Positions 844 to 62,687 of a stretch of DNA of 64,000 nt are shown piece after piece. The stretch is from Macrostomum lignano (lineage: Eukaryota), in the NCBI GenBank assembly GCA_002269645.1, contig NIVC01003517.1, forward strand, positions 62,001-126,000. The letters run 5' to 3'. The notes beneath the pieces are model-generated. The model was not told the origin of the DNA. It did not search any database and worked only from the letters and a program-made list of their open reading frames with translations. Each line of letters starts with the position of its first letter. The stretch's first letter is position 1. The translations under genes were made by a program, and so were the position numbers.

Positions 844-844
844 T

Positions 845-7481: not shown

Positions 7482-10400
7482 TCACTCTGAAAACTCGGAC
7501 GAGACGCACCGTTCGACGCCCTCCGCTCCCTGCAGAGCCCGCGCTGCCTGCTCCGCTCCGAAGACCTCCGACGGAACCCGCGGTCGGCTGCGGTCGCTCG
7601 GGTAGCGACAGTCGTCTACCATGGCGCCCGCCAGGTCGGCAACGTGACCGGCCAGGCTGCTCTGCAAGTCGCTGCCCGAGACGCAGCTCAGATGCTGGCT
7701 CAGCTGGTGGCTGCGCTCGATGGGCTGACCCTGTCTCAGCAGCAATGCCTTCAGTGCCTTCTCGGTAGCCTGCCAGCTGATGTAGCAGGCCCAGTTGTAC
7801 TCTCCGGCCTCAGCCAATCGGGATGCCGAGCGAACGTCGTGCCGCGCCGTCTTCAGGTACCTCGCAGCATCGTCAGGCGACGATCTGACAAAGTTTGCGC
7901 CGCCTGAACTGCAGAAAAAGCTGGCAGAACCGCCGCCTCTCGAACTGCCAGACCGGCCAGGGTAGCGGAAAGCGCAGCCACCGCCGCCGCCGCCACTGCT
8001 CCAGCCTCCTCCTCCGTAGCTTCTTGATCGCATGGTGACGACAACTTCCTCTGCGATGCGAATCTGCCGGTACCTGGTAACCCGAGTTGTCTGCTCGCGC
8101 CATCCACCAATGCACTGATCGAACTGTCGGGTCCATCCATGATTAGCAGCGCGCGTTCGCACCTGGTTGAATGACTCATCCGAGTTCGAGTAGTGAGCCA
8201 GTATGCGCTGAAAAATCTGGCGCTGCTGCTCGGTCGGCAGGGAAGCTGCGCTGCTCAGCAGATGATCCACCGTTGTTGCAACGTCCTCACCATTATTTTG
8301 GTTAGCTTGGGCGAAAGACCGCTCTTCAAAGGAGAACAACGCAGACATTGAAACTCGTAATTTCGAACCTCCACTGATTTCAATAGTAAACTCGCTAGTC
8401 CACGGGTTATCGCTGCCACCAGGGTGTCTTTCCACTACCCGAGCGTAAAAAAGTCCTCCATCGCCATTTCTGTAAGCCACAATTTGGTTCACAATGTCCC
8501 TTGGTCTATCTGGCAGTTGCTTCAGTAGACACTGCTCAAACTCCGGTACAGGTTCACCGAGCACTGAGTCATCGGTTGCGCTTGGCTCTGTAAACTGCTG
8601 CTCACTGGTCTGGTGCAGTGCAATTCCTAGTACGCGCAGAACGGTCAGCATGCTGTCTGGACTGTCCATAAGAAGCACCTGAATCAAATAACTTTTCTGC
8701 TCTGGCAAAATGTTGACACCGTTATTCAAAATCTGCATTATAATTTTGATAAAGTCCATCTGCCAGAGCTGCCTTCGGTCACCGCTCATCTCGTCCGGAA
8801 TCGTAGAGTGATTCATGAGAATCCGCTGCCCATCCAGAAAGAAGTTCTTGTCCTGTTCCGAGTCCTGCTGCTCGACACCATCCAGAAGCAGGCACGTACG
8901 CAACTCGGAAAGACATACAACCGAGAAGTGAGATATCAGAGATTTTACTGCAGCCAGTCGCTCGTCTCCTTTGCCAGAAAGATCCTTGTTTCCATGCAGC
9001 ATGATGCTTACGATGCACAGGTGCAGCACTGGGTGGCTCAACTTAGCTTGCAGACCGAGTAGGGTCTCACAGCTCTCACCATCGCTACACAACTTATTGG
9101 TGTCTGAAAGCAGCCTCTCGCTTACGTTGTCGCTCAGTTTCTTCAGGCCCATGTCGGCTGCGAGATGAAAGTACAGCCTCTGAAGCTTGTCAGTGCCCAG
9201 CTTGCAGAAGCTCAGATCAAGGAACTCTACATCCTGTGCGTCCACCAATCGATTGTTGTGCGCCTCTGAGTCGTTGATGGTCAGACACCTGCAGTCTACC
9301 AGTTCGAAAGCGGCTTCCGTGCTGCTGTCTTGATGCTGGCTTCTTTTAGGCAGGAAGAGCACTCTGTCGGACTGGAACTGGAGCCTGCCGCCCCGCTCCA
9401 GCAGCACTATGATACTCGATAGACAGTGCGAAACTGACTTCAGCTGCTCTGCACGAAGCGAGCCTTGCTGCTCATTCCGAATCAGTTCCAATGCGAGTCG
9501 AAGTTGCTCGATTGTGGCAGACTTTGTAGCTCCCAGTTTTGCAAACAGCTTGCGAAACTGTGAAAATTCTTGAGGACACTCGTAGATGTAAGGCAGAATA
9601 GCAGAGTTTTTATCGTGAGTAATTCTGCTAGCTGATATAAAAAATGATTTACATGTATAGCCTTCGGTTTTGGTTAGCACACACGGAATATCTTTCAGAA
9701 ATTTAATTGACTGAAATGCCGTAAAAAGCATAATGGTACTCAGCCTTGAGTACACGGAATTCATGACATGACTTCTCAGTGCTGCAACTTCGCTTCGAAG
9801 ATCAGCTGACGTGAAGGTCGCTGCAGAGAAAAGGTTGACAACGTGGCGCAGAAAAATGGCATCAGAAACTGGCATCGCTGAGCTTGCAAAGCAGCTGCCC
9901 TGGCCAACACAGCTCGGTCCGTAGGGCACGGCCGTCCAGCAGAGGAAGCGAGCCTCGAACAGGGCGCACTGGGACAGACTCGCCATTCGAAGTCGTTCGC
10001 TCTGACAAAGCCTCTGAAGAGCGCCGTCACTGTTGGCTACAATAAATTGAATTCCTGCCAGTTGTCGGACTACATGTTCGGTTATCTCTTTGCGGAATTT
10101 ATAGCTGTCGATAAACTTGAGCAGAGCTTCCGATTTCTTAGATAATTCATCTGTGATACCACTGGCTCCTTCTGTTTGCAGCTCACTGGCGAAGCTGATG
10201 GCAATTGTGGCCGTGCATTCCAAGATTAGACCGGAAAATTTCATCAGCGTTCTCCATCGCTCTTCATTGTACGGCGTTGGCAAGAAAAATTGTGGCTGAA
10301 GTAGCTTCTGAAAAATGTTTACTCTGCTATCATAAAACGTGTTGACGCTCCGCCATTGTCCGTCAAACGGAATGAGTTTGGCTGTGCTGAGAGACTGACT

Positions 10401-13400
10401 GAGCATTTGAAACTTGTCAGGGTCCTCCACTTGAACTCTTTCGAACTTCCAGCTCAGCTTTAGAAGTTTTTCGAGATGCTTTATTCGAGTGTTGTCGGTG
10501 AATTTGGAGAACAATGGCAGGATAAACCTGGCATAAACCTCAAGCTCTGCCATCTCGTCGCATTGAAGCTTTTCGTACAGCATCGTGAGAGACCAGTTTG
10601 CCTTCAAGAAGATGACCCGGCTGGAGCTCTTCCACTCGTCCATCTCGTCGGCCACGAGCGATGCCGGCAAGATGCAGGCCTGTTCAGAGTTGAGAGCGCA
10701 GCAACGACCGTCAGAAGTGACAAACACCGGTAATTGACGCACTCTTGCAAGGAGGTTCTGCTCTCCCATTCTCTTACTTAGCTCTCCCCAGTTGCTCTGA
10801 ATGTACACCAAAAAGCTCACAGCTTGCTTCTCAGTGGTCGCAGATCTCTCAGCGTTCTCATTTAGAGCGAACTCCATCACTCTCAGCATGGACTCGGGCT
10901 GTCTGACGTTGCCACACAGACTGCCGACCAGCTTCAAGCCCATCCTGCTGAGCGAGGGAGCGTTGAGTTGCTGCAGAGACTCCTCGACTGCTTTGCTGCA
11001 GTCATCGAGACCGAATCTGATTGGCTCATAAATACAGGGCGCCAGTGAGAGGCTTGCAAAGCGAGACTGGCTGACAGGAATCAGGTGTGCGCTGCCCAGT
11101 CCTGAAGAGGATAACGTTTGCATTGGTGCATTCTTATTAGTGCATTTGTTGTCTAGAAACTCCCACACTCGATTCAACCATTGTTCGAGAAACTCGGCTT
11201 CAGTACTAAACTCCCAATTCGATACGTAGTCAGTACGAGACATGCAGACTGCGGCATGCTCTCTGTGCAAAAGAGTGCGAAAATCCATCAGCTGAAACTT
11301 TTTACACAACTGTCCCTGGCATAGATTGATTTTCTTCTTCAGATCGAGCTGAAGTGAAACTTTCTTGTGCACAAACTCGTGCTTTGCTTCGCTGTGTGAA
11401 AACAAGTCGTGGAATTGAGTGAGAAACAGAGGCGTCGATCCATTGCCAAACTCAGTGAGTCGGTTACCGGCACCTAAATTCAAGGGCACTCCGATGAGAT
11501 GCTGCACCTCGTCTTGTAGTTCATCAAGCAGATATGCGAGCAGGCTTACAACGGCTTCTGGGGTTTGAAATGATGTCGCGCTCACATCACTCGGCAACGA
11601 ATCTCGAAGTCGCTTGCACGCTGGACCCCTGAGAAATGCGCAAATGGACACAGCATCAGCCAAAGGGGTGAATTCCAGCTGGCTCGACTCAAGCGACTGA
11701 CGAAGGCCTATATAATCCGGGACCATGATGGGAAATCGCAGTTTACTCAAAACGTTCTGAAGATACTCGGTCAAATTGTTCGGAGTCAGGAATGCAGCAC
11801 TACCGCTGACATCACCTGAGCTCTGTGCTAGCGGCAACCACTTCAGCTGTTTTTCAAGTACAGAGTGCACAGGGAAGATTGCCCACCGAAATCGAAAGGC
11901 GTTTTGGAAGACAAGCTTTGCAAGCTGGCCCCACAGCGTCTGATTGCTGGCGTGGTACTCTGGAAGAAGGCTGTAGAAGTGGTGTACGCTCTGCACATTC
12001 GGATAAACTGCTTTTGCTGCTTCGAGTAGACTGCCGTAGCAGTCAGGTAGAAGCTGAGTGGCCAGCACTTGGTTCCATTGCTCCTTGACATCTACAGCTC
12101 CATCCGCCTTCCACAGAGATCTGCGCGATGGGTCCATAATGAAGTGACCATTCACGTGTACAGGAAGTGCAGTCGTCACAGGCAATGGCAGCAGACAGTA
12201 GACGTGACCTTCTATCTGACATGCTTTAGTTATGGAGATTTGAGCGGCGACTCCGGTCTTTGGCAGAAGACGCCACTTCCCGGAGGCCACTTGCTGCTGC
12301 AGCTGTGCGGGCATGTGGTCCAGTCGACCTCCGAGTTTTTGGAAAACGAGCCATCTTTGCTTGAAATTGGTGCCAGTCCCGCTTACCTTGAGTTCGTAGG
12401 TGATCGAGCTGATTGGAATGCGGCTTAACTGAGCTCCCCTGCTCCGCAGATGCTGACTGGCGGTTCCGCACGCCTCCTTGAAGTAATCGAAGCAACCTGA
12501 TACAGTTTCAACTTCCAACTTGGCTGCAAAAACTGTTGTGAACTTGTTGTCAGCTGATACTTCGGAGAGTTGCACTTCACGGATATTCAAGAGAAACAAG
12601 GCAGTTCGCCCAAGTTCATTCTTGAATTCGTCGAATAGATGCTTGATTTTATCAGCACTGATGGAGCGTTTGCATATTCTAGATTTTTTAGCTGAACTCA
12701 CCGTTCTCAATGGCAGTCGAAACACGGTTCCTCCCGTTTGCGGCAAGCTCTCAGGACAGTACCCCGCAAATACGTCACGAAAAGTATCTTTCATACGCTG
12801 CACGTTCTGGAACATACCTCCTGGAGAAGACAAAGTAGCACCAGGCATGTACCTGCAGTGCGGATCCATCACGCAGAAAATCTTTCCATCGGACAGAAAC
12901 GAGGGCGCATCCGTGATGTTGTACACACAATTGAACCCGATGCCGTACTGTCCAGCTTTCCATGCGTCGTCTCGCTTGGACCCGAGACCGAGCTTCTGGA
13001 TGCCTTCGATGTCCGCATCGGAGAATGTCGAGTCGTTGTAGACGAGTAGCGCGGGTCCCTGCAGCTCCTTCCAGCGGTCACTCAGCACTTTCTCGGTCCC
13101 GTGATGCCGACGATCGATGATGAAGCTGATCTTTGATGCCCCAGCATCATCTGCATTCTGAATGAGTTCCTTGAAAAGCTCGATTCCAAGCGGGTATCCG
13201 GAAATGATGTTCTGCAGTCTGGTTGTGAGGTCCTCGTGTTGGCCGAAAGGCAGAGGCTGCATCGCTTGAGCCAGCATGCTTTCTCTCTGGCTTGGAATTC
13301 CAAGCTTCTGGCACAGTCCGAAGGAGATGTTTTCGTGGCAGAAGAAGGTCTCATTTGGTAGTTGCACAGACTTCATCCAAGGCAGGTTGTTAAAGCACAG

Positions 13401-16400
13401 TTGTGTGCAGGGTCTCAGAATGCGGCTATGGTCAGGTGCGAGCAAGCTCTCAGTCGCCAAGGCTTCATCCTGACGGCCGATCTGATCGAGTATTTTAAGG
13501 CTCAAATCTAAATCGCCAAGCGTTAGTGGTGCCGAGGAGTAACGCTGAGAAATAAGTTCAAGCACACCTGCATAGTGCAATGCTGTGAACTTTTGATTGA
13601 CTCCAGCTGCCTTGAAGAAGCTGTCGCACTGGATGCCGCTTAGTTCGGAAGGCAAAACATGAAGAAATGGCTCGAATCCCGCATCAGATCTCGACAGACT
13701 TACTTGAGCAGACCTTATGAATCCTTTAGGGGACCAAATAATGTTCGGAGTCTGTTTCACCATGCTAAGGACGCTATTCGCATTGAGATAACCGGAAGAG
13801 ATTTGGGCACTGAGGTGTCGATAAACGCACCGACTCACTCGCAGAGTTTCTTCATTGCCAGCTCGGGTCAGAGCTACCAGCTGCTGCCAAGCCACCTCTT
13901 TGGCGACGTGCCTCCCGTTCAGAACTCCGATTTGAGCCAAAAGATCTTGTCTCCTTGATGAGGCAACATCACGTAGCACCGTTTCGTCCAAAATAAGCTG
14001 CGATGCGGATACAAGATCTTTGCAGCTGGCATCAAACAGCTGACAAGGCTGGAAAAGTTGCGTTTTTGGATACTGATCAGCTCGCCAGACAAGGCAACTG
14101 TCGTTAGCTTTCTTCAAGGCAGGTAGAAATGCTACGTTTCTCAGCTGACTAATCGGCTGGTTTGAAAACCGAGAACGGAACGAATCCAAGTACGAAAGCA
14201 GCAACACCGTGCGCTCGGTTCTCTGAGGCTCGGAAAGCGCAGCAACTGACTGGGCGCGACTCAGCAACTCGGCCCAACTGAGATCCGCGCGGAGCCCGAC
14301 TGAGCGGAGCGCTCTCAGCCGATCCGGTGTCTGCATGTCCTTGTGAGGAAACACGCTTACGTTCATTTCGAACAGCCTCGCAGCCTGACAGCTGGTGTCC
14401 AGAAGCTGCAGAGGCTGACACAGGGCGTTTCCAACGTTAGGAATGCAGCAGGACTGCTTTAACAAATTTAAAACGTTTTGAGTTACAATTCTAGAAGCGG
14501 AGCTCCAGTCTGCATTGCCTCCACCACTGATAACATCCAGCATGAATTTCAGCACTCTAAAGCAGTCCTCAGAATAGCCCGACTGCCACAAGCGAGACAT
14601 GTTCGGCACCAAATTAAGCAGCAGTGTCTCGCCCGACCATTGACGCTGCAGAATCTTGTTCGTCAGTCCCAGCTGCTCCACAGTTCGTCGAACTCCATCG
14701 GTCAACGATGCGACACCTTCGTGCTGACCCACGAGTCTCGTGGCGAGTCGACTCAAACAATCTGAAATCCCAGCCAGTGACAGGATGCTGGGATCCAGAA
14801 ACACTGTGTGTCCCAAACTCTTCCACCCAGCTGATGTGTGAAAGATTGGCGCCTGACCGTCAAGCATGGAAGCGTAGAACTTCTCAATAAGCGGCCTCCA
14901 CACAGACTGAGTAGCTCTGTCGAATCGAGGCCACAGCTCTTGCGAAATCTCTGCATTCACCAAAGACATTCCACTTAGAATCTTCAGAGCGTCAATGTAG
15001 GCAGGACAAATGACGTCAGTGAGCAGCACTCGGTTCCACTCGCCGAGACTCCACACGCCCTGCTTCTCGTCGACCGTGACCTCGTTGAGGTGTCGTCGGC
15101 TCGAGGTGACGGAGAAGCTCGCGTTCAGCATCACTGGAAATGGATTTTCGACAGGCAGCGGTAGGAAGCAGAACAGCAGCGAGGCCGGCTGTGTGTCACG
15201 TGACAGTGGCACGATCCTGTGAGACTGCTCGACGGGCAGCGCCACGGCTCCCACAGGCGCCAGTCCGAGACGACGCTGCTCCAACGCGACAGCGAGCGAC
15301 TGCCCAGTACCGACAGCAGCGCATACGAGCCACACTCTGGTGGAGGCGACTGTGCTGATCTGGAACTGGTCATGAGCTGAGTCTCCAAGCTGAACCTCCA
15401 CCTCGACAGTCGCTTGACAGCGATGTTCTTGATTTTGTCCTGGCCGTCCTTGAGTAGCAGATTCGATCAGAGCTTCGGCTACCTTGAGAATAGAGTTCTG
15501 AGCAGCGAACTCTTGATCCGCTTGTGACATTCCTGCTATTGGTAGCGGTGGCAGTGAAATGGCATGTCGCTGGAAATATTTGAGAGGGCTCTTGTGAACG
15601 CAGAACACGAGTTGAGTTTGATTTGAAGGATCGGTCGCATTGGACGGCAGGAACAGACACCGGAATGTTCGCACTGTCTGGGTGAACAGAAGCATAGTGT
15701 CGGCTTGCTCTGCAGCGAGTCTCAACAAGCCACGAATCTCCGAGTCAGAGTACACGCGATCGCAGATCTTCGACTTCGCTGCCTGAGCCTCAGTGCGTAG
15801 CGGAAGACGCAGCAGCGTGCCGGCGAAGTTTCCTTCATCTGCTTGCAGATTGCAGCCTGAGACTCCAGCGAACGGTGCAAACTGGTTGGCGTACCGATCC
15901 AGCAGACTCGGCTGTGCTTGAAAGTCGAGCTCAACTCCAGTGTCCCTGTCCCCGTGACTCGCGTACACCGTCTCCAAGTAGCCCTCGCCCCTGCGCTCAC
16001 CGTGCGGGTCGAGGATCAGCATTCGGTGCCGACTGAGGATCTGCGGCACGTCAGTCAGGTTGTACACCGAGTTGAAGCCCAGACCGAAGCGACCGACCTT
16101 GGCCGTCTTCTCCAGTTTGGTGGCTCCGCTCAGCTGCAGGATGTTGTCGAAGTCCTCGTCGCTGAAGGTGGCGTTGTTGAAGGCCCACAGCGCCCGTCCC
16201 TGACAGTCGGCCATCGCCGGGTCGAGCAGCGACTCGGAGCCGCGCCAGTCGGAGTTCTCGCGACAGTCGTAGAGCAGCGTGACCTCGGTGGCGCCCGCGT
16301 CGTCAGCGTTCTGCAGCAGCTCCTTGGGCACCGCCAGACCGTCAGAGTACTCGTCGAGCAGTCGTTTGAGTCGTCGGGTGAACGGCTCAGACTGGCCGCG

Positions 16401-16430: not shown

Positions 16431-16521
16431 TCTGGAGGCCTGTGTGTAGGATTTTTAAGGGGCTTGAACTGTGATTGAAGTACATGAAAATGCATGACTT
16501 GCATGAGTTGCTTACATGGCA

Positions 16522-16922: not shown

Positions 16923-16984
16923 ATGAGATATTGGGCGAGAAGGAAAGGAAGTAAAAGAAGACTACACAATCTCTCAAAGCAGAC

Positions 16985-43938: not shown

Positions 43939-43944
43939 CTTGCA

Positions 43945-44812: not shown

Positions 44813-45512
44813 ACACCAGCGTAACTATAAGCAGGTACACATGCACGCAGAAATGGCCAAAAGTTCCCTAATTTCAAAATCACAATTTTAGTGACATTAT
44901 TTTTTGCAGTAACTCGGCAACGAAAAATGGAGCTGTATAAAAAAAGTTCTTACCGTTTGTATCAAAAGAGGTTTGGAAAAACAATAGGTGGAATTGATTT
45001 TTTTCTTAGAGAAGTTTCACGATCGAGTAACTACTCAATTGATTGCGAGCTGTTAACGATATCAGTGCATTGTGTGTATCATTATATACTGTCGCTTTCC
45101 TAACGAGATGTCATTTCCAGGAAATTCACCGTGCATTACCGGTACGTACACGAATTTCTGGTAAATAGGCCAACCAGACTCACTGAGCTTATAAGTGGGA
45201 GAATTTTCTATCATTACCAACTCTGTCCAACTCCCAGTCCCAGCATGCACAGTTTAAGGGGATCGAAAATTAGTCAGGAGAAATGGACTTACAAATGTGC
45301 GCCATTCTTTCAGTTTACCCGTGGAAGCATAGCAACAAAACATTCCCGGGGTAGAAAGTCGAGAAGACAGTACTATTGACATCACCGCTATTGTCTCCAG
45401 CTGTTACTGTCTTCACAGCTACAGTCTCAGTCGCTATTGTGTTTCCTGCGACAATGCCCCAAGCACTCCTCTGGCGGGCAAGCGTCGTCACATTACATGC
45501 AGAGTGTCAGGG

Positions 45513-45560
45513 AAGAGAGAGAGAGAGAGAGAGAGAGGAGTGAGTGACTGAGTGAGGAGA
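45513..45560. repeat. (GA)n / GAGT microsatellite
   Basis: The run is directly visible. Confidence 0.85.
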
Positions 45561-47290: not shown

Positions 47291-48129
47291 CATGAAAAAG
47301 TATGCTGGGATAAAATCCCAAGCAAAAGAGGAAAAAACATGAGAGAAAGTACAAAAAATTAATGGAGGCGATAATTATTAAAAAAAGAAGAGAGTAGAAA
47401 AGCAAACAAAAAAATCATATTGCTACTGTCATTAGTAAGTGCAGTACATCAAAGGAACTCATGTGTCCTCACACCAGTACTGACTGTCCATCCTCATCAT
47501 ATTTAAGCTTTAATTTCTTCTTGAACAGCTTTAAAATCTGTTTTTCTTTACATCTTAGATTTGCCGAGTTTCTGAATTTAATCACGTGATCCAATTCTAA
47601 GCACTAGGATAGGAGCTAATGCTGATGAAATGTTGATGACCCACGCATTGACGCAAAAAAGCCGTCGTCGTTGGTAGGTAGAACGATCCGCAGCACCCAG
47701 TCAAGCACTGCAGAACGAACAGGAACGGCACAATCGCGTAGGTATCACTTTACATGTGCCTTTAAAGTTTTTAAGCAACAGAAAATTGTTAGAAGAGAAG
47801 TCATTTAGAAAACCAATTTAAAAAAGTAGAAAACATTGCCACTGCTAAACAATAAAAAACAAGAAACACACGTTTTTAGGCTTGATCACCCCCGTCATGT
47901 GATGACTGTTTCGATTTTTAAAAATTTCGTTTTAAAACGAAAACGAAACCGGAAACAAAAAATGTTATACTTTATTTTCGTTTGCTCCATGAAGCTGATT
48001 ACTTTTAGCACTCCTTCAACACACAGTTTACGGTTGAAGTACTTTAACGATGTTGTTTGACGAGGGTATCCAAGTAAACAGTACCAAACCCAACCGACCT
48101 AGTGAGAAAAATTATGATGCACAAGGATA

Positions 48130-48490
48130 TAAGTACGGATGCTTTGTGTACGCCAGAGTGCTGTAGAAACATCCTGTTGAAGTCGAGAATCCATGGAGCA
48201 GTGAGTACATCATTGACATAGGCGAAAGTGCTCACGTCAAAGCCACGAAAGCTGAGCTGTTCGTACTCAATAAGCAACCAGCTTCACTTTATTCATCGGC
48301 TCCAGATGAAAACATGGATGTCAGAGCGTCCATTGACCATCTGTTGAGCAGTGCAGCTTCGCTGTCGTCTGAACAGCAGCGTCAAGTACTACTAACTCAT
48401 TTGAACAGAATTTGAATGCGCTGCTGAGCATACCTGGACTCACTAAATCCATAATCTCATTGACGAGTGGCAGCAGCATTGGTGCAGAAG
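48130..48490 (+). pseudogene. Diverged, inverted fragment of a sacsin-like C-terminal region
   Basis: The plus strand reads GCFVYARVL*KHPVEVENPWSSEYIIDIGESAHVKATKAELF and DVRASIDHLLSSAASLSSEQQRQV. The array copies read GRLVYARVVERHPGGSDNPWTSEFTIKIGEGSKLRVSMSALF and DIATTVDHLLSSAASLPTEQQRQI. Confidence 0.85.
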
Positions 48491-50669: not shown

Positions 50670-50799
50670 CTCGAATCCAACAAAAAACACATGACAAGAC
50701 AAAGCAAAAAAGATTTCCCCACCTCCTTCTGCATCGCGCTACACGCGCAAACCAGTTGTCTGCAGAAAAACAAAGCCAACTCAAAGTCCCTCACTCGAG

Positions 50800-53700
50800 T
50801 CATTCGGCAAACTCGGACGAGACGCACCGTTCGACGCCCTCCGCTCCCTGCAGAGCCCGCGCTGCCTGCTCCGCTCCGAAGACCTCCGACGGAACCCGCG
50901 GTCGGCTGCGGTCGCTCGGGTAGCGACAGTCGTCCACCATGGCGCCCGCCAGGTCGGCAACGTGACCGGCCAGGCTGCTCTGCAGGTCGCTGCTCGAGAC
51001 GCAGCTCAGATGCTGGCTCAGCTGGTGGCTGCGCTCGATGGGCTGACCCTGTCTCAGCAGCAATGCCTTCAGCGCCTTCTCAGTAGCCTGCCAGCTGATG
51101 TAGCAGGCCCAGTTGTACTCTCCGGCCTCAGCCAATCGCGCAGCCGAGCGCAGGTCGTGCCGCGCCGTCTTCAGGTACCTCGCCGCATCGTCAGGCGACG
51201 GTTTGGCAAAGTTTGCGCCACCTGAACTGCAGAAAAAGCTGGCAGAACCGCCGCCTCTCGAACTGCCAGACCGGCCAGGGTAGCGGAAAGCGCAGCCACC
51301 GCCGCCGCCGCCACCGCTCCAGCCTCCTCCTCCGTAGCTTCTTGATCGCATGGTGACGACAACTTCCTCTGCGATGAGAATCTGTCGGTACCTGGTAACC
51401 CGAGTTGTCTGCTCGCGCCATCCACCAATGCACTGATCGAACTGTCGGGTCCATCCATGATTAGCAGCGCGCGTTCGCACCTGGTTTAATGACTCATCCG
51501 AGTTCGAGTAGTGAGCCAGTATGCGCTGAAAAATCTGGCGCTGCTGCTCGGTCGGCAGAGAAGCTGCGCTGCTCAGCAGATGATCCACCGTTGTTGCAAT
51601 GTCCTCACCATTATTTTGGTTAGCTTGGGCGAAAGACCGCTCTTCAAAGGAGAACAGCGCAGACATTGAAACTCGTAGTTTCGAACCTTCACCGATTTTA
51701 ATAGTAAACTCGCTAGTCCACGGGTTATCGCTGCCACCAGGGTGTCTTTCCACTACCCGAGCGTAAACAAGTCTTCCATCGTCATTTCTGTAAGCCACAA
51801 TTTGGTTCACAATGTCCCTTGGTCTATCTGGCAGTTGCTTCAGTAGACACTGCTCAAACTCCGGTACAGGTTCACCGAGCACTGAGTCATCGGTTGCGCT
51901 TGGCTCTGCAAACTGCTGCTCACTGGTCTGGTGCAGTGCAATTCCTAGTCCGCGCAGAACGGCCAGCATGCTGTCTGGACTGTCCATAAGAAGCACCTGA
52001 ATCAAATAACTTTTCTGCTCTGGCAAAATGTTGACACCGTAATTCAAAATCTGCATTATAATTTTGATAAAGTCCATCTGCCAGAGCTGCCTTCGGTCAC
52101 CGCTCATCTCGTCCGGAATCGTAGAGTGATTCATGAGAATCCGCTGCCCATCCAGAAAGAAGTTCTTGTCCTGTTCCGAGTCCTGCTGCTCGACACCATC
52201 CAGCAGCAGACACGTGCGCAACTCGGAAAGACACACAACCGAGAAGCGAGATATCAAAGATTTCACTGCAGCCAGTCGCTCGTCTCCTTTGCCAGAAAGA
52301 TCCTTGTTTCCATGCAGCATGATGCTTACGATGCACAGGTGCAGCATTGGGTGGCTCAACTTAGCTTGCAGACCGAGTAGGGTCTCACAGCTCTCACCAT
52401 CGCTGCAAAACTTATTGGTGTCTGAAAGCAGCCTCTCGCTTACGTTGTCGCTCAGTTTCTTCAGGCCCATGTCGGCTGCGAGATGAAAGTACAGCCTCTG
52501 AAGCTTGTCAGTGCCCAGCTTGCAGAAGCTCAGATCAAGGAACTGTACATCCTGTGCATCCACCAATCGATTGTTGTGCGCCTCTGAGTCGTTGATGGTC
52601 AGACACCTGCAGTCCACCAGTTCGAAAGCGGCTTCCGTGCTGCTGTCTTGATGCTGACTTCTTTTAGGCAGGAAGAGCACTCTGTCGGACTCGAACTGGA
52701 GCCTGCCGCCCCGCTCCAGCAGAACTATGATACTCGATAGACAGTGCGACACTGACTTCAGTTGCTCTGCGCGAAGCGAGCCTTGTTGCTCATTCCGAAT
52801 CAGTTCCAATGCAAGTCGAAGTTGCTCGATTGTGGCAGACTCTGTAGCTCCCAGTTTTGCAAACAGCTTGCGGAACTGTGAAAATTCTTGAGGACACTCG
52901 TGAATGTAAGGCAGAATAGCAGAGTTTTTATCTTGAGTAATTCTGCCAGCTGATACAAAAAATGATTTATAGCCTTCGGTTTTGATTAGCACACACGGAA
53001 TATCTTTCAGAAATAGAATTGACTGAACTGCTGTAGAATTCATAATGGTACTCAATCTTGAGTACACGGAATTCATGACATCGCTTCTCAGTGTTGCAAC
53101 TTCGCCTCGAAGATCAGCTGACGTGAAGGTCGCTGCAGAGAAAAGGTTGACAACGTGGCGCAGAAAAATGGCATCAGAAACTGGCATCACTGAGCTTGCA
53201 AAGCAGCTGCCCTGGCCAACACAGCTCGGTCCGTAGGGCATGGCAGTCCAGCACAGGAAGCGAGCCTCGAACAGGGCGCACTGGGACAGACTCGCCATTC
53301 GAATTCGATCGCTCTGACAAAGGCTCTGAAGAGCGCCGTCGCTGTTGGCTACAATAAATTGAATTCCTGCCAGTTGTCGGACTACAGATTCAGTTCTGTC
53401 TATGCGGAACTCATAGCTGTCGATAAACTTGAGCAGAGCTTCCGATTTCTTAGATAACTCATCTGTGATACCAATGGCTCCTTGCGTTTGCAGTTCACTG
53501 GCAAAGCTGATGGCAATTGGAGCCGTGCATTCCAAGATCAGACCGGAAAATTTCATCAGCTTTCTCCATCGCTCTTCATTGTACGGCGTTGGCAAGAAGC
53601 ATTGTGGCTGAAGAAACTTTTTGAAAATTTCAACATTTCCATCATAAAACGTGTTGACGCTCCACCATTGTCCGTCAAACGGAATGAGTTTGGCTGCCCT

Positions 53701-56700
53701 GAGAGACTGACTGAGCATTTGAAACTTGTCAGGGTTCTTCACTTTAACCCTTTCGAAATCCCAGCTCAGCTCGCAAAGTTTTTCGAGATGCTTTTTTCGA
53801 GTATCGTCGGTGAACTTGGAGAACACTGGCAGGATAAACCTCGCATAAACCTCAAGCTCTGCCATCTCGTCGCATTGAAGCTTTGCGTACAGCATCGTGA
53901 GAGACCAGTTTGCCTTCAAGAAGATGGCCTTGCTGGAGCTCTTCCACTCGTCCATCTCATCGGTCACGAGCGATGCCGGTAAGATACAGGCCTGCTCAGA
54001 CTTGAGCGCACAGCAGCGACCATCAGAAGTGACAAACACCGGTAATTGACGCACTCTTGCAAGGAGGTTCTGCTCTCCCATTCTCTTACTTAGCTCTCCC
54101 CAGTTGCTCTGAATGTACACCAAAAAGCTCACAGCCTGCTTCTCTGTGATCGTAGATCTCTCAGCGTTCTCATTTAGAGCGAACTCCATCACTCTCAGCA
54201 TGGACTCGGGCTGTCTGACGTTGCCACACAGACTGCCGACCAGCTTCAAGCCCATCATGCTGAGCGAGGGAGCGTTGAGCTGCTGCAGAGACTCCTCAAC
54301 TGCTTTGCTGCAGTCATCGAGACCGAATCTGATTGGCTCATAAATACAGGGCGCTAGTGAGAGGCTTGCAAAGCGCGACTGGTTTACAGGAATCAGGTGT
54401 GCGCTGCCAGTCCTGAAGAGGATAACGTTTGCATTGGTGCATTCTTATTAGTGCATTTGTTGTCTAGAAACTCCCACACTCGATTCAACCATTGTTCGAG
54501 AAACTCAGCTTCCATTCCGAACTCTGAATTTGGTAAAAAGGCAGAGTCAGTCCTGCAGATTGCAGCATGCTCTCTGTGCAGAAGAGTGCAAAAATCCATC
54601 AGCTGAAACTTTTTGCACAGCTGTTTCTGGATTAAATTGTTTTTCTTATTTTGATCGAGCTGAAACAAAACTTTCTTGTGCACAAACTCGTGCTTTGCTT
54701 CGCTGTGTGAAAACAAGTCGTGGAATTGAGTGAGAAACAGAGGCGTCCGTCCATTGTCAAACTCAGTGAGTCGGTTACCGGCACCTAAATTCAAGGGCAC
54801 TCCGATGAGATGCTGCACTTCGTCTTGCAATTCATCAAGCAGATATTTGAGCAGGCTTACAACGGCCTCTGGTGTTTGAAATGATGACGTGCTCACATCA
54901 CTCGGCAACGAATCTCGAAGTTGCTTGCACGCTGGACCCCTGAGAAATGCGCAAATTGACACAGCATCAGCTACAGGGCTGAACTCCAGCTGGCTCGACT
55001 CAAGCGACTGACGAAGGCCTACATGATCCGGGACCATGATGGGAAATCGCAGTTTACTCAGGATGTTCTGAAGAAACGCGGTCAAATTGTACGGAGTCAA
55101 GAATGCAGCACTACCGCTGACATCACCTGAGCTCTGTGCTAGCGGCAGCCACTTCAGCTGCTTTTCAAGTACAGAGTGCACAGGGAAGATGGCCCATCGA
55201 AATCGAAAGGCGTTTTGGAAGACAAGCTTTGCAAGCTGGCCCCACAGCGTCTGATTGCTTGCGTGGTACTCTGGAAGAAGGCTGTAGAAGTGGTGTACGT
55301 TCTGCACATTCGGATAAACTGTTTTTGCTGCTTCGAGTAGACTGCCATAGCAGTCAGGCAGAAGCTGTGTGGCCAGCACTTGGTTCCATTGCTCCTTGAC
55401 ATCCACAGCTCCATCCGCCTTCCACAGAGATCTGCGCGATGGGTCCAGAATGAAGTGACCGTTCACGTGTACAGGAAGTGCAGTCGTCACAGGCAATGGC
55501 AGCAGACAGTAGACGTGACCTTCAACCCTGCATGTTTCAGTCATGGAAATGGGAGCAGCGACTCCGGTCTTTGGCAAAAGACGCCACTTTCCGGAGGCCA
55601 CTTGCTGCTGCAGCTGTGCGGGCATGTGGTCCAGTCCACCTCCGAGTTTTTGGAAAACGAGCCATCTTTGCTTGAAATTGGTGCCAGTCCCACTAACCGT
55701 AAGTTCGTAGGTGACCGAGCTGACTGGAATGCAGCTTAACTGAGCTCCCCTGCTCCGCAGATGCTGACTGGCAGTTTCGCACGCCTCCTTGTAGTTATCA
55801 AAGCACCCTGATACAGTTTCAACTTCCAACTTGGCGGCAAAAACTGTTGTGAACTTGTTGTCAGGCCATACTTCGGAGAGTTGCACTTCACGGATATTCA
55901 AGAGAAACAAGGCAGTTCGCCCAAGTTCATTCTTGAATTCGTCGAATAGCTGCTTGATATCATCGGCACTTACCGATCGTTCGCATATCCTAGATTTTTT
56001 AGCTGAGCTCACCGTTCTCAATGGCAGTCGAAACACGGTTCCTCCGGTTTGCTTCAAGCTCTCGGACAGTACCCCGCAAATACGTCGCGAAAAGTATATT
56101 TCAAACACTCGACGTTCTTGTACATACCTCCTGGAGAAGCCAAAGTAGCACCAGGCATGTACCCGCAGTGCGGATCCATCACGCAGAAAATCTTTCCATC
56201 GGACAGAAACGAGGGCGCATCCGTGATGTTGTACACACAGTTGAACCCGATGCCGTACTGTCCAGCTTTCCATGCGTCGTCTCGCTTGGACCCGAGACCG
56301 AGATTCTGGATGCCTTCGATGTCCGCATCGGAGAATGTCGAGTCGTTGTAGACAAGAAGCGCAGGTCCCTGCAGCTCCTTCCAGCTGTCACTCAGCACTC
56401 GCTCGGTCCCGTGATGCCGACGATCGATGATGAAGCTGATCTTTGATGCCCCAGCATCGTCCGCATTCTGAATGAGTTCCTTGAAGAGCTCGATTCCAAG
56501 CGGGTATCCGGAAATGATGTTCTGCAGTCTGGTTGTGAGGTCCTCGTGTTGGCCGAAAGGCAGAGGCTGCATCGCTTGAGCCAGCATGCTTTCTCTCTGG
56601 CTTGGAATTCCAAGTTTCTGGCACAGTCCGAAGGAGATGTTTTCGTGGCAGAAGAAGGTCTCATTTGGTAGTTGCACGGACTTCATCCAAGGCAGGTTGT

Positions 56701-59700
56701 TAAAGCACAGTTGTGTGCAGGGTCTCAGAATGCGGCTATGGTCAGGTGCGAGCAAGCTCTCAGTCGCCAAGGTTTCATCCTGACGGCGGCTAATCTGGTC
56801 GAGTATTTTCAGGCTCAAATCTAAATCGCCAGGTATTAGTGGTGCCGAGGAGTAACGCTGAGAAAGAAGTTTAAGCACACCTGCATAGTGCGATGCCGCG
56901 AAATTTTCATTGACTCCAGCTGCCCTGAAGAAGCTTTCGCACTGAATGCCGCTTAGTTCGGAAGGCAAAACATGAAGAAATGGCTCGAATCCCGCATCAG
57001 ATCTCGACAGACTTACTTGAGCAGGCGTAATGAAACCTGATGGGGACCAAATAATGTTCGGAGTCTGAGTCACTATGCCAAGAACCATTTGGCTATTGAG
57101 CCGTCGGTTGGAGATTTGGGCACTGAGGTGTCGATAAACGCACCGGCTCACTCGCAGAGTTTCTTCATTGCCAGCTTGGGTGCCGGCCAGAGCTACCAGC
57201 TGCTTCCAAGCCACCTCATTGGTGACGTAACTCACGTTCAAAACTCCGATTTGAGCCAAAAGATCTTGTCTGCTTGATGAGGCAACATCACGCAGCACCG
57301 TCTCGTCCAAAATAAGGTATGAAGCCGAAACGAGATCTTTGCAGCTGGCATCAAACAGCTGACAAGGCTGGAAAAGTTGCGTTTTTGGATGCCGATCTGA
57401 AAGCCAGACAAGGCAACTGTTATTAAGCTTCTTCAAGGCAGGTAGAAATGCTACGTTTCTCAGCTGACTAATCGGCTGGTTTGAAAACCGAGAGCGGAAC
57501 GAATCCAAGTAGGAAAGCAGCAACACTGTGCGCTCGGTTCTCTGAGGCTCGGAAAGCTCAGCAACTGACTGAGCGCGACTCAGCAACTCGGCCCAATTGA
57601 GATCCGCGCGAAGCCCGACTGTGCGGAGCGCTCTCAGCTGATCCGGTGTCTGCAGGTCACTGTGAGGAAACATGCTTGCGTTCATTTCAAACAGCCTTGC
57701 AGCCTGACTGCTGGTGTCCAGAAGCTGCACAGGCTGACACAAGGCGTTTCCAACGTTAGGAATGCAATAAGACTGCTTTAATGAATTCAAAACCTTTTGA
57801 GTAACAAGTCTAGAAGCGGAGCTCCAGTCTGCATTGCCTCCACCACTGATAATATCCAGCATGAATTTCAGCGCTCCAAAGCAGTCCTCAGAGTAGCCCG
57901 ACTGCCACAAGCGAGACATGTTCGGCACCAAATTAAGCAGCAGGGTCTCGCCCGACCATTGACGCTGCAAAATCTTGTTCGTCAGTCCCAGCTGCTCCAC
58001 AGTTCGTCGAACTCCATCGGTCAACGATGCTACACCTTCGTGCTGACCCACGAGTCTCGTGGCGAGTCGACTCAAACAATCTGAAATCCCAGCCAGTGAC
58101 AGGATGCTGGGATCCAGAAACACCGTGTGTCCCAAACTCTTCCACCCAGCTGATGTGTGAAAGATTGGCGTCTGACCGTCAAGCATGGAGGCGTAGAACT
58201 TCTCAATAAGCGGCCTCCACACTGACTGAGTAGCTCTGTCGAATCGAGGCCACAGCTCTTGCGAAATCTCTGCATTCACCAAAGACATTCCACTTAGAAT
58301 CTTCAGAGCGTCGATGTAGGCAGGACAAATGACGTCTGTGAGCAGCACTCGGTTCCACTCGCCGAGACTCCACACGCCCTGCTTTTCGTCGACCGTGACC
58401 TCGTTGAGGTGTCGTCGGCTCGAGGTGACGGAGAAGCTCGCGTTCAGCATCACTGGAATGGATTTTCGACAGGCAGCGGTAGGAAACAGAACAGCAGCGA
58501 GGCCGGCTGTGTGTCACGTGAAAGAGGCACGATCCTGTGAGACTGCTCGATGGGCAGCGCCACGGCTCCCACAGGCGCCAGTCCGAGACGACGCTGCTCC
58601 AACGCGACAGCGAGCGACTGCCCAGTACCGACAGCAGCGCACACGAGCCACACTCTGGTGGAGGCGACTGTGCTGATCTGGAACTGGTCTTGAGCGGAGT
58701 CTCCAAGCTGAACCTCTACCTCGACAGTCGCTTGACAGCGATGCTCTTGATTTTGTCCTGGCCGTCCTTGAGTAGCAGATTCGATCAGAGCTTCGGCTAC
58801 CTTGAGAATGGAGCTCTGAGCAGCGAACTCTTGATCCGCCTGTGACATTCCTGATATTGGTAGCGGTGGCAGTGCAATGGCATGTCGCTGGAAATATTTG
58901 AGAGGCCTTTTGTGAGCGAAGAACACGAGTCGCGTTTGCTTTGAAGGATCGGTCGCATTGGACGGCAGGAACAGACACCGGAATGTTCGCACTGTCTGGG
59001 TGAACAAAAGCATAGCGTCAGCTTGCTCTGCAGCGAGTCGCAACAAGCCACGAATCTCCGAGTCAGAGTACACGCGATCGCAGATCTTCGACTTCGCTGC
59101 CTGAGCCTCAGTGCGCAGTGGAAGACGCAGCAGCGTGCCGGCGAAGTTTCCTGCATCTGCTTGCAGATTGCAGCCTGAGACCCCAGCGAACGGTGCAAAC
59201 TGGTTGGCGTACCGATCCAGCAGACTCGGCTGTGCTTGAAAGTCGAGCTCAACTCCAGTGTCCCTGTCCCCGTGACTCGCGTACACCGCCTCCAAGTAGC
59301 CCTCGCCCCTGCGCTCACCGTGCGGGTCGAGGATCAGCATTCGGTGCCGACTGAAGATCTGCGGCACGTCAGTCAGGTTGTACACCGAGTTGAAGCCCAG
59401 ACCGAAGCGACCGACCTTGGCGGTCTTCTCCAGCTTGGTGGCTCCGCTCAGCTGCAGGATGTTGTCGAAGTCCTCGTCGCTGAAGGTGGCGTTGTTGAAG
59501 GCCCACAGCGTCCGTCCCTGACAGTCGGCCATGGCCGGGTCGAGCAGCGACTCGGAGCCGCGCCAGTCGGAGTTCTCGCGACAGTCGTAGAGCAGCGTGA
59601 CCTCGGTGGCGCCCGCGTCGTCAGCGTTCTGCAGCAGCTCCTTGGGCACCGCGAGACCGTCAGAGTACTCGTCGAGCAGTCGCTTGAGTCGTCGGGTGAG

Positions 59701-59748
59701 TGGCTCAGACTGGCCGCGCAGGCGCAGGCCGTCGGAGGTCTGGGCCAT
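50800..59748 (-). CDS. SACS: Sacsin-like copy 3 (~2983 aa if three 1-bp deletions are corrected); pseudogene or assembly-damaged gene
   Basis: Four consecutive ORFs (58450-59901, 56054-58453, 54393-56273, 50800-54258) tile the full protein. The breaks at ~58457, ~56064 and ~54407 are each one missing base in a short run. No in-frame stops are present. Confidence 0.88.
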
Positions 59749-62623: not shown

Positions 62624-62639
62624 CTCTCTCTCTCTCTCT

Positions 62640-62687
<48 letters not shown>

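What the first reader, a model, noticed from the sequence alone, without database searches (positions are those of the whole stretch)
7482..59748. Tandem array of giant intronless sacsin-HEPN genes with the signature of a birth-and-death, possibly defence-related family
Seen: three co-oriented ~9-kb single-exon genes in 16-18-kb duplication units (excluding the inserted CMC element), plus a relic, each with two GHKL-type sacsin repeats and a terminal HEPN. Known: vertebrate SACS is single-copy with UBL, three repeats, J and HEPN domains; HEPN domains are often RNases or effectors in conflict systems; sacsin-like ATPases occur in prokaryotic conflict loci. Inference: tandem expansion, loss of UBL and HPD, retained HEPN, mosaicism and clustered divergence fit a lineage-specific ATPase-sensor/HEPN-effector family in animal immunity or stress response rather than a housekeeping chaperone.
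Basis: partly seen in the sequence, partly recalled or inferred. Interest (0 to 1): 0.8.

Follow-up and report, generated by a model that had tools for sequence, protein, structure and literature searches.

The report
Tandem sacsin-like ATPase–HEPN gene cluster

Summary
The observation largely holds. Three co-oriented (- strand) ~9-kb copies sit in 16.1-kb and 18.5-kb units, and a decayed fragment lies on the + strand. Only copy A is an intact gene (7482..16430, 2982 aa). Copy B is split by an 8,682-bp DNA transposon. Copy C has three 1-bp homopolymer deletions.

Each copy encodes two sacsin ATPase repeats, a small beta-barrel, a J-like domain that has lost the HPD motif, and a HEPN domain that keeps Arg/His. 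Vertebrate sacsin lacks those HEPN residues.

The copies are 93-96% identical in the coding sequence, but their flanks are only 72-85% identical. B and C are nearly identical over about 750 codons, and the mosaic pattern is significant. This is concerted evolution combined with recent gene death. dN/dS is 0.30-0.36 on every branch, so there is no sign of positive selection.

The closest relatives are Macrostomum lignano genes with the same architecture, also in a tandem array. The ATPase repeat matches TmtA of the bacterial anti-phage system Tiamat (E=4e-107), which pairs the same ATPase with a nuclease domain.

A defence or stress role as an ATPase-coupled HEPN effector is plausible but untested. 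The idea is already in the literature (Anantharaman 2013; oyster and snail studies).

The parts
7482..16430 (-). Copy A: intact intronless ORF of 2982 aa (two sacsin repeats, beta-barrel, J-like domain without HPD, Gly-rich linker, HEPN)
   Evidence: ORF list, translation, Pfam: two SACS matches plus HEPN, PDB sequence hits to the sacsin repeat domain 5v44-5v47
15651..16430 (-). Copy A, GHKL-type N-domain of the first sacsin repeat (aa 1-260). The motifs ELLQNADDAG (from aa 37) and GRFGLGFNSVY (from aa 113) are identical in A, B and C.
12531..13250 (-). Copy A, GHKL-type N-domain of the second sacsin repeat (aa 1061-1300). The motifs ELIQNADDAG (from aa 1088) and GQYGIGFNCVY (from aa 1160) are identical in A, B and C. 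The region aa 1060-2019 matches positions 9-716 of the Tiamat TmtA profile.
8328..8525 (-). Copy A, small SH3/Tudor-like beta-barrel (about aa 2636-2701). It aligns with the 'EYVG...IYA...LYKF' module that precedes the J domain in canonical sacsin-like proteins.
   Evidence: alignment A1, AlphaFold model with pLDDT 70-86, weak Foldseek hits to Tudor and SH3-like barrels
8028..8291 (-). Copy A, degenerate J-like helical region (about aa 2714-2801). The canonical W-HPD-KN is replaced by H-YSN-SD in A, B and C.
   Evidence: alignment with 11 homologues, all carrying HP[DE]K; copies compared; no DnaJ Pfam hit even at E<=10
7506..7862 (-). Copy A, HEPN domain (aa 2857-2975) with R2906-S-H2908-Q-L-S-Q-H2913, identical in A, B and C
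   Evidence: Pfam E=1.4e-15; PDB sequence hits 1o3u, 1ufb, 1wol, 3o10; Foldseek TMt 0.70-0.79 to TT1696, 3o10 and ST0689; motif census
37021..41200 (-). Copy B, 5' half (about aa 1-1394, both repeat N-domains). It stays in frame up to the transposon.
28339..37020 (+). 8,682-bp DNA transposon inserted in copy B. It has 35-nt terminal inverted repeats (CCCTAGGGACCC...), a 2-bp TT target-site duplication and a DUF1258 ORF at 33624..36020.
23571..28338 (-). Copy B, 3' half (about aa 1391 to the end, including HEPN). It is in frame. The stop codon is mutated TGA to TTA, so the ORF runs 7 codons further. There are two in-frame deletions of 6 and 24 bp.
50800..59748 (-). Copy C: full-length and collinear with A, but in four ORFs because of three 1-bp deletions next to positions 58459, 56064 and 54408 (TTT to TT, CC[T/C] to CC, GGG to GG). 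No in-frame stops remain after correcting the frame.
48089..48488 (+). Relic: decayed fragment of a divergent paralogue (barrel plus J-like region) in the opposite orientation, with in-frame stops
4205..7243 (.). 3' flank of unit A, including a 22-bp minisatellite (4538-5405). It is homologous to the 3' flanks of B (21873-23336) and C (48651-50670) at only 72-85% identity.
43516..44819 (.). 5' flank element of unit B with a 24-bp minisatellite (43942-44804). It is homologous to the 5' flank of unit C (61895-63988) at 71-87% identity.

Best explanation
The region is a genuine tandem cluster of three young, concertedly evolving paralogues of a lineage-specific sacsin-like gene. The source organism is most likely a flatworm, because the only relatives with the same architecture are from Macrostomum lignano.

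Shown:
- Each copy encodes two sacsin repeat regions with intact Bergerat-fold ATP-binding motifs, a small SH3/Tudor-like barrel, a J-domain remnant without the HPD motif, a disordered Gly-rich linker and a C-terminal HEPN four-helix domain.
- The HEPN keeps the family-conserved His and an adjacent Arg, both absent from vertebrate sacsin.
- The array is homogenised by gene conversion confined to the coding sequence.
- Copies are being lost at the same time: B to a transposon insertion, C probably to frameshifts, and an older relic to decay.
- Every lineage shows moderate purifying selection (omega about 0.3), so the disruptions are very recent.

Inferred mechanism:
- The protein is no longer an Hsp70 co-chaperone, because a J domain without HPD cannot stimulate Hsp70.
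- It instead works as an ATP-driven sensor or scaffold. Its two sacsin-repeat ATPase modules would control a C-terminal HEPN dimer that cleaves or binds RNA or nucleotides.
- This is the same logic as the bacterial anti-phage protein TmtA (Tiamat). TmtA has a homologous sacsin-type ATPase region joined to a NOV_C/PD-(D/E)XK nuclease domain.
- The likely physiological setting is an antiviral or stress response, as reported for mollusc sacsin families.
For: Structure of the array:
- Copy coordinates and identities.
- Transposon TIRs and target-site duplication.
- Frameshifts in C.
- Relic.

Domains:
- Pfam: two SACS matches (E=1.6e-144) and HEPN (E=1.4e-15).
- PDB sacsin repeat domain hits at E about 1e-38.
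- ATP-binding motifs identical in all three copies.
- HPD present in 11 of 11 canonical homologues but YSN here, with no DnaJ hit at E<=10.
- The AlphaFold model has a confident HEPN (pLDDT about 90) that matches TT1696, human sacsin HEPN 3o10 and ST0689.
- The conserved His is present in 61 of 72 sacsin-like HEPNs (the window's three copies plus 69 database homologues) but absent from the vertebrate sacsin in that alignment (P0104) and from human sacsin HEPN 3o10.

Evolution:
- Pairwise dS is 0.084-0.119 and omega is 0.30-0.33.
- Branch pN/pS is 0.36, 0.30 and 0.32, not significantly different.
- B and C are nearly identical over codons about 892-1641, and run tests give p<=1e-4.
- Flanks are 72-85% identical.
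- pS and pN covary across windows, rho 0.68-0.84.

Relatives:
- M. lignano proteins are 36-39% identical and have two repeats. They lack HPD and share the 'ERSH' HEPN motif.
- They sit in a tandem array of 92%-identical copies together with a truncated copy.

Defence analogy:
- PADLOC TmtA match at E=4e-107.
- 279 bacterial loci encode relatives of the repeat. In five of the eight examined (about 1,700-1,900 aa) the protein is SACS plus NOV_C, and the two of those tested match TmtA over its full length.
- Tiamat is a listed anti-phage system and is enriched in defence hotspots.
- Oyster and mussel sacsin genes are a poly(I:C)- and virus-induced multigene family.
- Sacsin and HEPN families are expanded in intertidal snails.
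- Anantharaman et al. predicted a HEPN RNase role for invertebrate sacsins.
Against: - There are no expression, induction or biochemical data for these genes.
- Omega of about 0.3 with no branch differences gives no sign of an arms race, and three sequences cannot support site models.
- The Arg/His arrangement (R-x-H, or R-x6-H) is not the textbook Rx4-6H spacing in an unambiguous register. PF05168-type HEPNs include non-catalytic nucleotide binders such as human sacsin.
- Only one of the three copies is certainly functional, so the array could be largely redundant.
- The resemblance to Tiamat is limited to the ATPase repeat. The effector domain differs, and Tiamat's own mechanism is not established in the papers read.
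- The taxonomic origin of the window is inferred only from best hits.
Confidence: 0.5

Rival explanations
1. These are ordinary proteostasis or cytoskeleton-type sacsin paralogues. The genes would act as ATP-dependent chaperones or scaffolds, like vertebrate sacsin, with the HEPN as a non-catalytic dimerisation or nucleotide-binding module. The tandem array would be a selectively neutral segmental duplication that is already decaying, with no role in defence.
For: - Omega is about 0.3 on all branches, with no excess of nonsynonymous change.
- Divergence peaks are explained by mosaic ancestry.
- Two of the three copies are disrupted.
- The HEPN fold superposes well on the non-catalytic human sacsin HEPN, TMt 0.75-0.79.
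- Sacsin's known function is that of a chaperone.
Against: - The J domain has lost HPD, so the Hsp70-coupled part of the canonical mechanism is gone.
- The HEPN keeps the His and Arg that the non-catalytic vertebrate form has lost.
- The same multi-copy organisation is maintained in M. lignano.
- The repeat's bacterial relatives are defence proteins.
- Mollusc family members are induced by viral mimics.
Confidence: 0.3
2. The array is a non-functional remnant. All three copies would be recently silenced or on their way to pseudogenes, and the intact ORF of A would simply not have been hit yet.
For: - B is split by a transposon and C has three frameshifts.
- A decayed relic lies nearby.
- B's stop codon is mutated.
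Against: - A 2982-codon ORF with no stop codon is very unlikely without selection.
- pN/pS is 0.30-0.36 on all three branches, so selection acted over nearly all of their divergence.
- All catalytic-type motifs are identical in the three copies.
Confidence: 0.1
3. The array is an assembly artefact. The 'copies' would be haplotypes or homeologues of one locus wrongly laid out in tandem.
For: - The copies are 93-96% identical.
- The three frameshifts in C have the form of homopolymer assembly errors.
- From my own knowledge, the closest sequenced relative, M. lignano, has a duplicated and difficult genome.
Against: - Flanks are far more diverged (72-85%) than the genes, and they differ in content: different minisatellites, a (GACT)100 array only upstream of A, a relic only between B and C, and a transposon only in B.
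- The mosaic pattern changes partner along the gene.
- An independently assembled M. lignano contig shows the same tandem layout.
Confidence: 0.04

Closest known systems
Invertebrate 'sacsin-like' proteins (about 4,300-4,500 aa; corals, amphioxus, molluscs, annelids, echinoderms)
   Same: - They share the sacsin repeat regions with GHKL N-domains, the barrel module, the J-region position and the C-terminal PF05168 HEPN with the conserved His.
- They are collinear over 80-100% of the query.
- They are multi-copy families, several per chromosome.
- They are reported as expanded or virus-induced families.
   Different: - The window protein has two repeats instead of three. The spacing indicates that the first repeat is the one missing.
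- Its J domain lacks HPD, whereas 11 of 11 aligned canonical members keep it.
- Identity is only 25-32%.
Macrostomum lignano sacsin/HEPN proteins (e.g. UniProt A0A1I8FZK2; BOX15_Mlig016547g1 on contig NIVC01000891)
   Same: - Two-repeat architecture.
- No HPD, and the 'ERSH' HEPN motif.
- ORFs of about 2,900 aa in a giant exon.
- Co-oriented tandem copies about 92% identical, with a truncated copy and minisatellites between them.
   Different: - Amino-acid identity is only 34-39%.
- The M. lignano genes appear to have two short 5' exons before the giant exon, whereas the window genes are fully intronless.
- The public gene models there are fragmentary or chimeric: one model spans 46 kb.
Vertebrate sacsin (SACS, the ARSACS disease gene)
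   Same: - Sacsin repeat N-domain (PDB 5v44-5v47, E about 1e-38).
- HEPN fold (3o10, TMt 0.75-0.79).
- Giant coding exon.
   Different: - Vertebrate SACS is single-copy and has a UBL, three repeats and a functional J domain.
- Its HEPN lacks the conserved Arg/His.
- The window protein has no UBL, two repeats, no HPD, and retains Arg/His.
Tiamat anti-phage system, protein TmtA (PADLOC PDLC03965 and related models)
   Same: - The sacsin-type ATPase repeat is homologous over about 700 profile positions (E=4e-107).
- Both are single polypeptides that pair this ATPase with a C-terminal nuclease-superfamily domain.
   Different: - TmtA is prokaryotic, has one repeat and carries a NOV_C/DUF3883 (PD-(D/E)XK-type) C-terminus.
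- The window protein is eukaryotic, has two repeats and carries HEPN instead. No NOV_C was detected.
HEPN-T (PF05168) proteins of prokaryotic MNT-HEPN modules (TM0613, TT1696, ST0689)
   Same: These are the best sequence and structure matches of the HEPN domain. The Arg/His residues align with 'KRGH' of 1wol (ST0689).
   Different: They are stand-alone small proteins paired with a nucleotidyltransferase. Here the HEPN is the C-terminus of a 2,982-aa ATPase.

Membership tests
Sacsin family | Sacsin repeat region with GHKL/Hsp90-like N-domain (Pfam SACS PF25794) | tested here: met
   There are two matches, E=1.6e-144. PDB sacsin repeat domains match at E about 1e-38.
Sacsin family | Bergerat-fold ATP-binding motifs (E-L-x-Q-N-A-D-D-A; G-x-x-G-x-G-F-N) | tested here: met
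   Both repeats carry them, and they are identical in A, B and C.
Sacsin family | Three repeat regions | tested here: not met
   There are two repeats, at aa 1 and aa 1061. Canonical members have three.
Sacsin family | J domain with HPD motif before the HEPN | tested here: not met
   The region aligns, but HPD is replaced by YSN. There is no DnaJ hit at E<=10.
Sacsin family | C-terminal HEPN domain (PF05168) | tested here: met
   Pfam E=1.4e-15. Foldseek matches human sacsin HEPN 3o10 with TMt 0.75-0.79.
Sacsin family | N-terminal ubiquitin-like domain (vertebrate orthologues only) | tested here: not met
   The protein starts at the first repeat, and Pfam finds no UBL. UBL is described as a vertebrate addition.
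Catalytic HEPN RNases | Conserved Rx4-6H active-site motif | tested here: inconclusive
   The sequence R2906-S-H2908-Q-L-S-Q-H2913 fits Rx6H, and it also contains the family-conserved His (61 of 72). The catalytic register is uncertain.
Catalytic HEPN RNases | Metal-independent endoribonuclease activity | not testable with these tools
   This needs a biochemical assay.
Tiamat (TmtA) defence system | N-terminal sacsin-type ATPase region | tested here: met
   PADLOC TmtA E=4e-107, profile positions 9-716 of 1370.
Tiamat (TmtA) defence system | C-terminal NOV_C/DUF3883 nuclease-type domain | tested here: not met
   There is no PF13020 hit in the window protein. The domain is present in bacterial relatives.
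Tiamat (TmtA) defence system | Protects against viral infection | not testable with these tools
   This needs infection experiments.
Birth-and-death multigene family | Tandem duplicates together with pseudogenes or relics | tested here: met
   B is split by a transposon, C is frameshifted, and there is a relic with stop codons.
Birth-and-death multigene family | Copies diverge independently, without homogenisation | tested here: not met
   There is a B=C tract of about 750 codons. Run tests give p<=1e-4. Flanks are much more diverged than synonymous sites.
Birth-and-death multigene family | Diversifying (positive) selection | tested here: not met
   Omega is 0.30-0.36 overall and on each branch. 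Site models are not possible with three mosaic sequences.
CMC (Mirage-type) DNA transposon (the insert in copy B) | Terminal inverted repeats and a 2-bp target-site duplication | tested here: met
   35-nt TIRs that are 91% complementary, and a TT duplication.
CMC (Mirage-type) DNA transposon (the insert in copy B) | CMC-type DDE transposase | tested here: inconclusive
   The only hit is Pfam DUF1258 at E=8e-14. The superfamily assignment was not verified.

The most novel reading that the evidence does not exclude
Animals would carry a counterpart of the bacterial Tiamat logic. A sacsin-type ATPase senses an infection or stress cue and licenses a fused nuclease, here a HEPN RNase freed from Hsp70 coupling by loss of HPD. 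Flatworm arrays would use gene conversion, including short hypervariable patches such as 16 changes in 10 codons of copy C, to shuffle recognition surfaces among paralogues.
Probability: 0.2. Interest if true: 0.75.

Novelty: new variant of a known kind. Interest (0 to 1): 0.4.

Why it matters
Sacsin is known mainly as a human ataxia gene whose HEPN domain has no clear role. Invertebrate sacsin-like families are large and virus-induced, but mechanistically unstudied.

This variant is a natural separation-of-function form. It has lost the Hsp70-recruiting HPD motif but keeps the ATPase motifs and a HEPN with candidate catalytic residues. Its ATPase repeat is homologous to a validated bacterial anti-phage protein.

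That makes one question directly testable: is the ancestral job of sacsin-type proteins an ATPase-gated nuclease response rather than chaperoning? Macrostomum, where the closest relatives of these genes are found, is a flatworm genus in which RNAi is routine (my own knowledge).

The locus is also a clean example of concerted evolution confined to a 9-kb coding sequence. However, family expansion and the defence hypothesis are both already in the literature, so the advance is incremental.

Tried and rejected
- Exact-sequence look-up of copy A in public assemblies found nothing, so the source organism could not be identified. It is inferred only from best hits to M. lignano.
- I first assumed from the precomputed Pfam lists that invertebrate sacsin-likes generally lack a J domain, which would have made 'loss of HPD' a misreading. 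Direct alignment showed HPD in 11 of 11 canonical homologues, so I dropped that idea.
- Positive selection was tested and not found. Pairwise and branch dN/dS are about 0.3. Windows with high dN also have high dS.
- I tested whether C is a long-standing pseudogene. Its branch pN/pS (0.32) equals that of A and B, so any inactivation is recent or artefactual. All three frameshifts falling in one copy has a chance probability of about 0.11 under uniform assembly error (my calculation), which is not decisive.
- Foldseek did not recover a J-domain match for the J-like helices. That assignment rests on the sequence alignment only.
- ORFs in the intergenic regions gave no Pfam domains apart from retroelement fragments at 845-3875. 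No partner gene is co-duplicated with the sacsin-like gene.
- Literature searches for sacsin with Macrostomum, and for Tiamat together with sacsin, found nothing linking them.
- The second fetched M. lignano locus (L002) was not available for local analysis.

Full report
**What is in the window**

The window holds three long blocks of minus-strand sequence that are 93-96% identical to each other:
- A: 7361..16505
- B: 23337..28338 plus 37021..41304
- C: 50671..59859

The offsets are 16,093 bp from A to B and 18,534 bp from B to C once the insert in B is removed.

Only A is an intact gene. It is a single ORF at 7482..16430 encoding 2,982 aa.

B is split after about codon 1392 by an 8,682-bp element at 28339..37020. 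The element has 35-nt terminal inverted repeats (CCCTAGGGACCC...), a 2-bp TT target-site duplication and a + strand ORF at 33624..36020 that matches Pfam DUF1258. Both halves of B remain in frame. B also has 6-bp and 24-bp in-frame deletions, and its stop codon is mutated so the ORF runs seven codons further.

C is full-length and collinear with A, but it is cut into four ORFs by three 1-bp deletions next to positions 58459, 56064 and 54408. Each lies in a 3-base homopolymer. After frame correction C has no stop codon.

A fourth piece, the relic, lies on the opposite strand at 48089..48488. It is 35-37% identical to A residues 2640-2783 and carries in-frame stops.

**Domain anatomy**

- *ATPase repeats.* Pfam finds two SACS domains (PF25794, E=1.6e-144) and a C-terminal HEPN (PF05168, E=1.4e-15) in A. 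B's two halves carry the same domains. The first 256 residues match the crystal structures of the sacsin repeat domain (5v44-5v47, E about 1e-38). The ATP-binding motifs of both repeats (ELLQNADDAG/GRFGLGFNSVY and ELIQNADDAG/GQYGIGFNCVY) are identical in A, B and C.
- *C-terminal region.* I aligned the last 420 residues with 11 canonical invertebrate sacsin-like proteins. The window protein has the same small module, followed by the J-domain position and then the HEPN. All 11 homologues carry W-HP[DE]-K there, whereas the window copies have H-YSN-SD. No DnaJ match appears even at E<=10.
- *Structure model.* An AlphaFold model of this region has mean pLDDT 65. It shows a beta-barrel (about aa 2636-2701), a helical J-like segment, a disordered Gly-rich linker and a confident four-helix HEPN with pLDDT about 90. 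Foldseek places the HEPN with TT1696, human sacsin HEPN (3o10, TMt 0.75-0.79) and ST0689. The barrel matches Tudor and SH3-like folds only weakly.
- *HEPN residues.* The HEPN contains R2906-S-H2908-Q-L-S-Q-H2913, identical in the three copies. H2908 is the family-conserved His, present in 61 of 72 sacsin-like HEPNs (the window's three copies plus 69 database homologues). Vertebrate sacsin lacks both that His and the Arg. This agrees with Anantharaman et al. 2013, who noted that several animal sacsins keep the HEPN motif while the human protein does not.

**Relatives**

Canonical invertebrate sacsin-like proteins are about 4,400 aa with three repeats. The window protein has two. Their spacing matches repeats 2 and 3 of the canonical form, so the first repeat is the one missing.

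The only database relatives with the same two-repeat form are from the flatworm Macrostomum lignano, at 36-39% identity. These also lack HPD and share the 'ERSH' HEPN motif.

An M. lignano contig (NIVC01000891) carries two full copies with ORFs of 2,919 and 2,911 aa that are 92% identical over 10.3 kb. It also carries a truncated copy and the tail of a fourth, all co-oriented and with minisatellites between them. The variant architecture and the tandem, partly decayed organisation therefore predate this array. The M. lignano genes appear to have two short 5' exons, whereas the window genes are fully intronless.

The window's own proteins are not in the public collections. A flatworm origin is an inference.

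**How the array evolves**

- *Rates.* Pairwise dS is 0.084-0.119 and dN/dS is 0.30-0.33.
- *Mosaicism.* The three sequences are mosaic. B and C are almost identical across codons about 892-1641, where A differs by 3-7%. Elsewhere the closest pair changes. Permutation tests on runs of concordant variable sites give p<=1e-4 for B=C and A=B, and p=6e-4 for A=C.
- *Extent of homogenisation.* The high-identity block ends about 75-105 bp upstream of the ATG and 115-240 bp downstream of the stop. The homologous flanks beyond it are only 72-85% identical, far more diverged than synonymous sites. The coding sequences are therefore homogenised by gene conversion after an older duplication.
- *Hypervariable patches.* Short patches are real and not alignment artefacts. 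Examples are 16 nucleotide changes in codons 878-887 of C and 12 changes in codons 1692-1706 of A. They most plausibly come from micro-conversion by more distant paralogues.
- *No localised selection signal.* Across 100-codon windows pS and pN rise and fall together (Spearman 0.68-0.84). Clustered divergence therefore reflects mosaic ancestry rather than localised positive selection.
- *Timing of the disruptions.* Branch-specific pN/pS is 0.36 (A), 0.30 (B) and 0.32 (C), with no significant difference. B and C were under the same constraint as A for essentially all of their divergence. The transposon insertion is recent. C's frameshifts are either very recent or assembly errors.
- *Overall.* The pattern is concerted evolution with ongoing gene death, not classic birth-and-death divergence, and it shows no detectable diversifying selection.

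**Is it an artefact?**

A haplotype or homeologue mis-assembly is unlikely.
- The units differ in flank content: a (GACT)100 array only upstream of A, a 22-bp minisatellite downstream of A and B, a 24-bp minisatellite upstream of B and C, the relic only between B and C, and the transposon only in B.
- The flanks are much more diverged than the genes.
- An independent M. lignano assembly shows the same layout.

**Function**

Nothing here tests function directly. Three observations bear on it.

1. Loss of HPD removes the feature that couples a J domain to Hsp70 (established knowledge). The canonical co-chaperone mechanism is therefore not available, while the ATPase motifs and the HEPN are conserved.
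2. The sacsin repeat matches TmtA of the bacterial anti-phage system Tiamat at E=4e-107 over about 700 profile positions.
   - A scan of bacterial genomes found 279 loci encoding relatives at 33-46% identity, many in cyanobacteria, myxobacteria and planctomycetes.
   - I examined eight of these. Five proteins of about 1,700-1,900 aa are SACS plus NOV_C (PF13020). The two of those tested match TmtA end to end.
   - Tiamat is listed among validated anti-phage systems. It is classed as carrying a PD-(D/E)XK nuclease and is enriched in defence hotspots.
   - A sacsin-type ATPase joined to a nuclease-superfamily C-terminus is therefore a recurrent defence architecture, with HEPN taking the nuclease position in animals.
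3. Mollusc sacsins are a multigene family induced by poly(I:C) and herpesvirus. Sacsin and HEPN families are reported as expanded 'defense gene sets' in intertidal snails. Sacsin domains occur in fusions typical of antiviral conflict systems.

My best reading, at about 0.5 confidence, is an ATP-gated HEPN effector or sensor used in an antiviral or stress response. The main rival, at about 0.3, is a non-immune proteostasis or scaffold role with a non-catalytic HEPN.

**Novelty**

Expansion of sacsin-like genes in invertebrates, and the hypothesis that their HEPN acts as an RNase in defence or stress, are both published. M. lignano proteins of the same architecture are already in public databases, though poorly modelled.

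New here:
- the explicit description of the two-repeat, HPD-less variant that retains Arg/His in the HEPN;
- its concerted evolution in tandem arrays;
- the direct profile match to Tiamat TmtA, which I did not find stated in the searched literature.

I rate it a new variant of a known kind, of moderate interest.

Noticed in passing
L003 (contig CBDBCZ010000016.1, 'MAG: Nitrospirales bacterium', 1.52 Mb; record range 1142664-1155380, reversed), locus 1-12060: One uninterrupted ORF of at least 4,020 aa runs off the start of the locus. It has an animal-type full sacsin architecture: at least two SACS domains, a J domain with an intact HPD ('KRLYLKWHPDKN') and a C-terminal HEPN. It is collinear over about 4,000 aa with coral and other sacsin-like proteins at about 28% identity, and its GC content is 41%. 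It could be host-to-symbiont gene transfer, a mis-binned eukaryotic contig, or a bacterial lineage close to the origin of animal sacsin.
   Followed up: partly
window 28339-37020: An 8.7-kb DNA transposon with 35-nt TIRs (CCCTAGGGACCC...), a 2-bp TT target duplication, many subterminal AATGCATT-type repeats, a DUF1258 ORF (33624-36020) and several further ORFs without Pfam hits (30009-32195). The 2-bp duplication and DUF1258 are consistent with a Mirage/CMC-type element, but I did not verify the superfamily.
   Followed up: partly
window 845-3875: Retroelement remnants to the left of the array. A minus-strand ORF (845-1633) has weak gag and RT matches. A plus-strand ORF (1989-3875) has RT and RNase H domains.
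   Followed up: partly
window 16522-16923: A nearly perfect (GACT)x100 microsatellite (99% matches) begins about 90 bp upstream of copy A's start codon. It is absent upstream of B and C and replaces the upstream sequence that B and C share.
   Followed up: no
window 4538-5405, 22225-22576, 43942-44804, 63504-63955: Two minisatellite families mark homologous positions of the duplication units: a 22-bp unit downstream of A and B, and a 24-bp unit upstream of B and C. The 24-bp arrays have a strong GC skew.
   Followed up: partly
L001 (M. lignano NIVC01000891.1, record range 12631-78894): The public gene model BOX15_Mlig016547g1 (2,010 aa) spans 46 kb. It evidently stitches exons from several tandem sacsin-like copies, whereas the DNA holds two giant ORFs of 2,919 and 2,911 aa. 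The M. lignano annotations of this family are unreliable.
   Followed up: partly
proteins P0017, P0021, P0025: Some family members carry extra names or domains. An M. lignano sacsin-like protein is named 'Mab-21 domain-containing'. Coral members have N-terminal glycosyltransferase-type domains (PF00534, PF13692, PF20706) or a second HEPN type (PF18738). These could be real immune-type fusions or gene-model chimeras.
   Followed up: no
window 59749-59901: Copy C has an in-frame ATG 51 codons upstream of the conserved start. It is not shared by A or B and probably has no significance.
   Followed up: no
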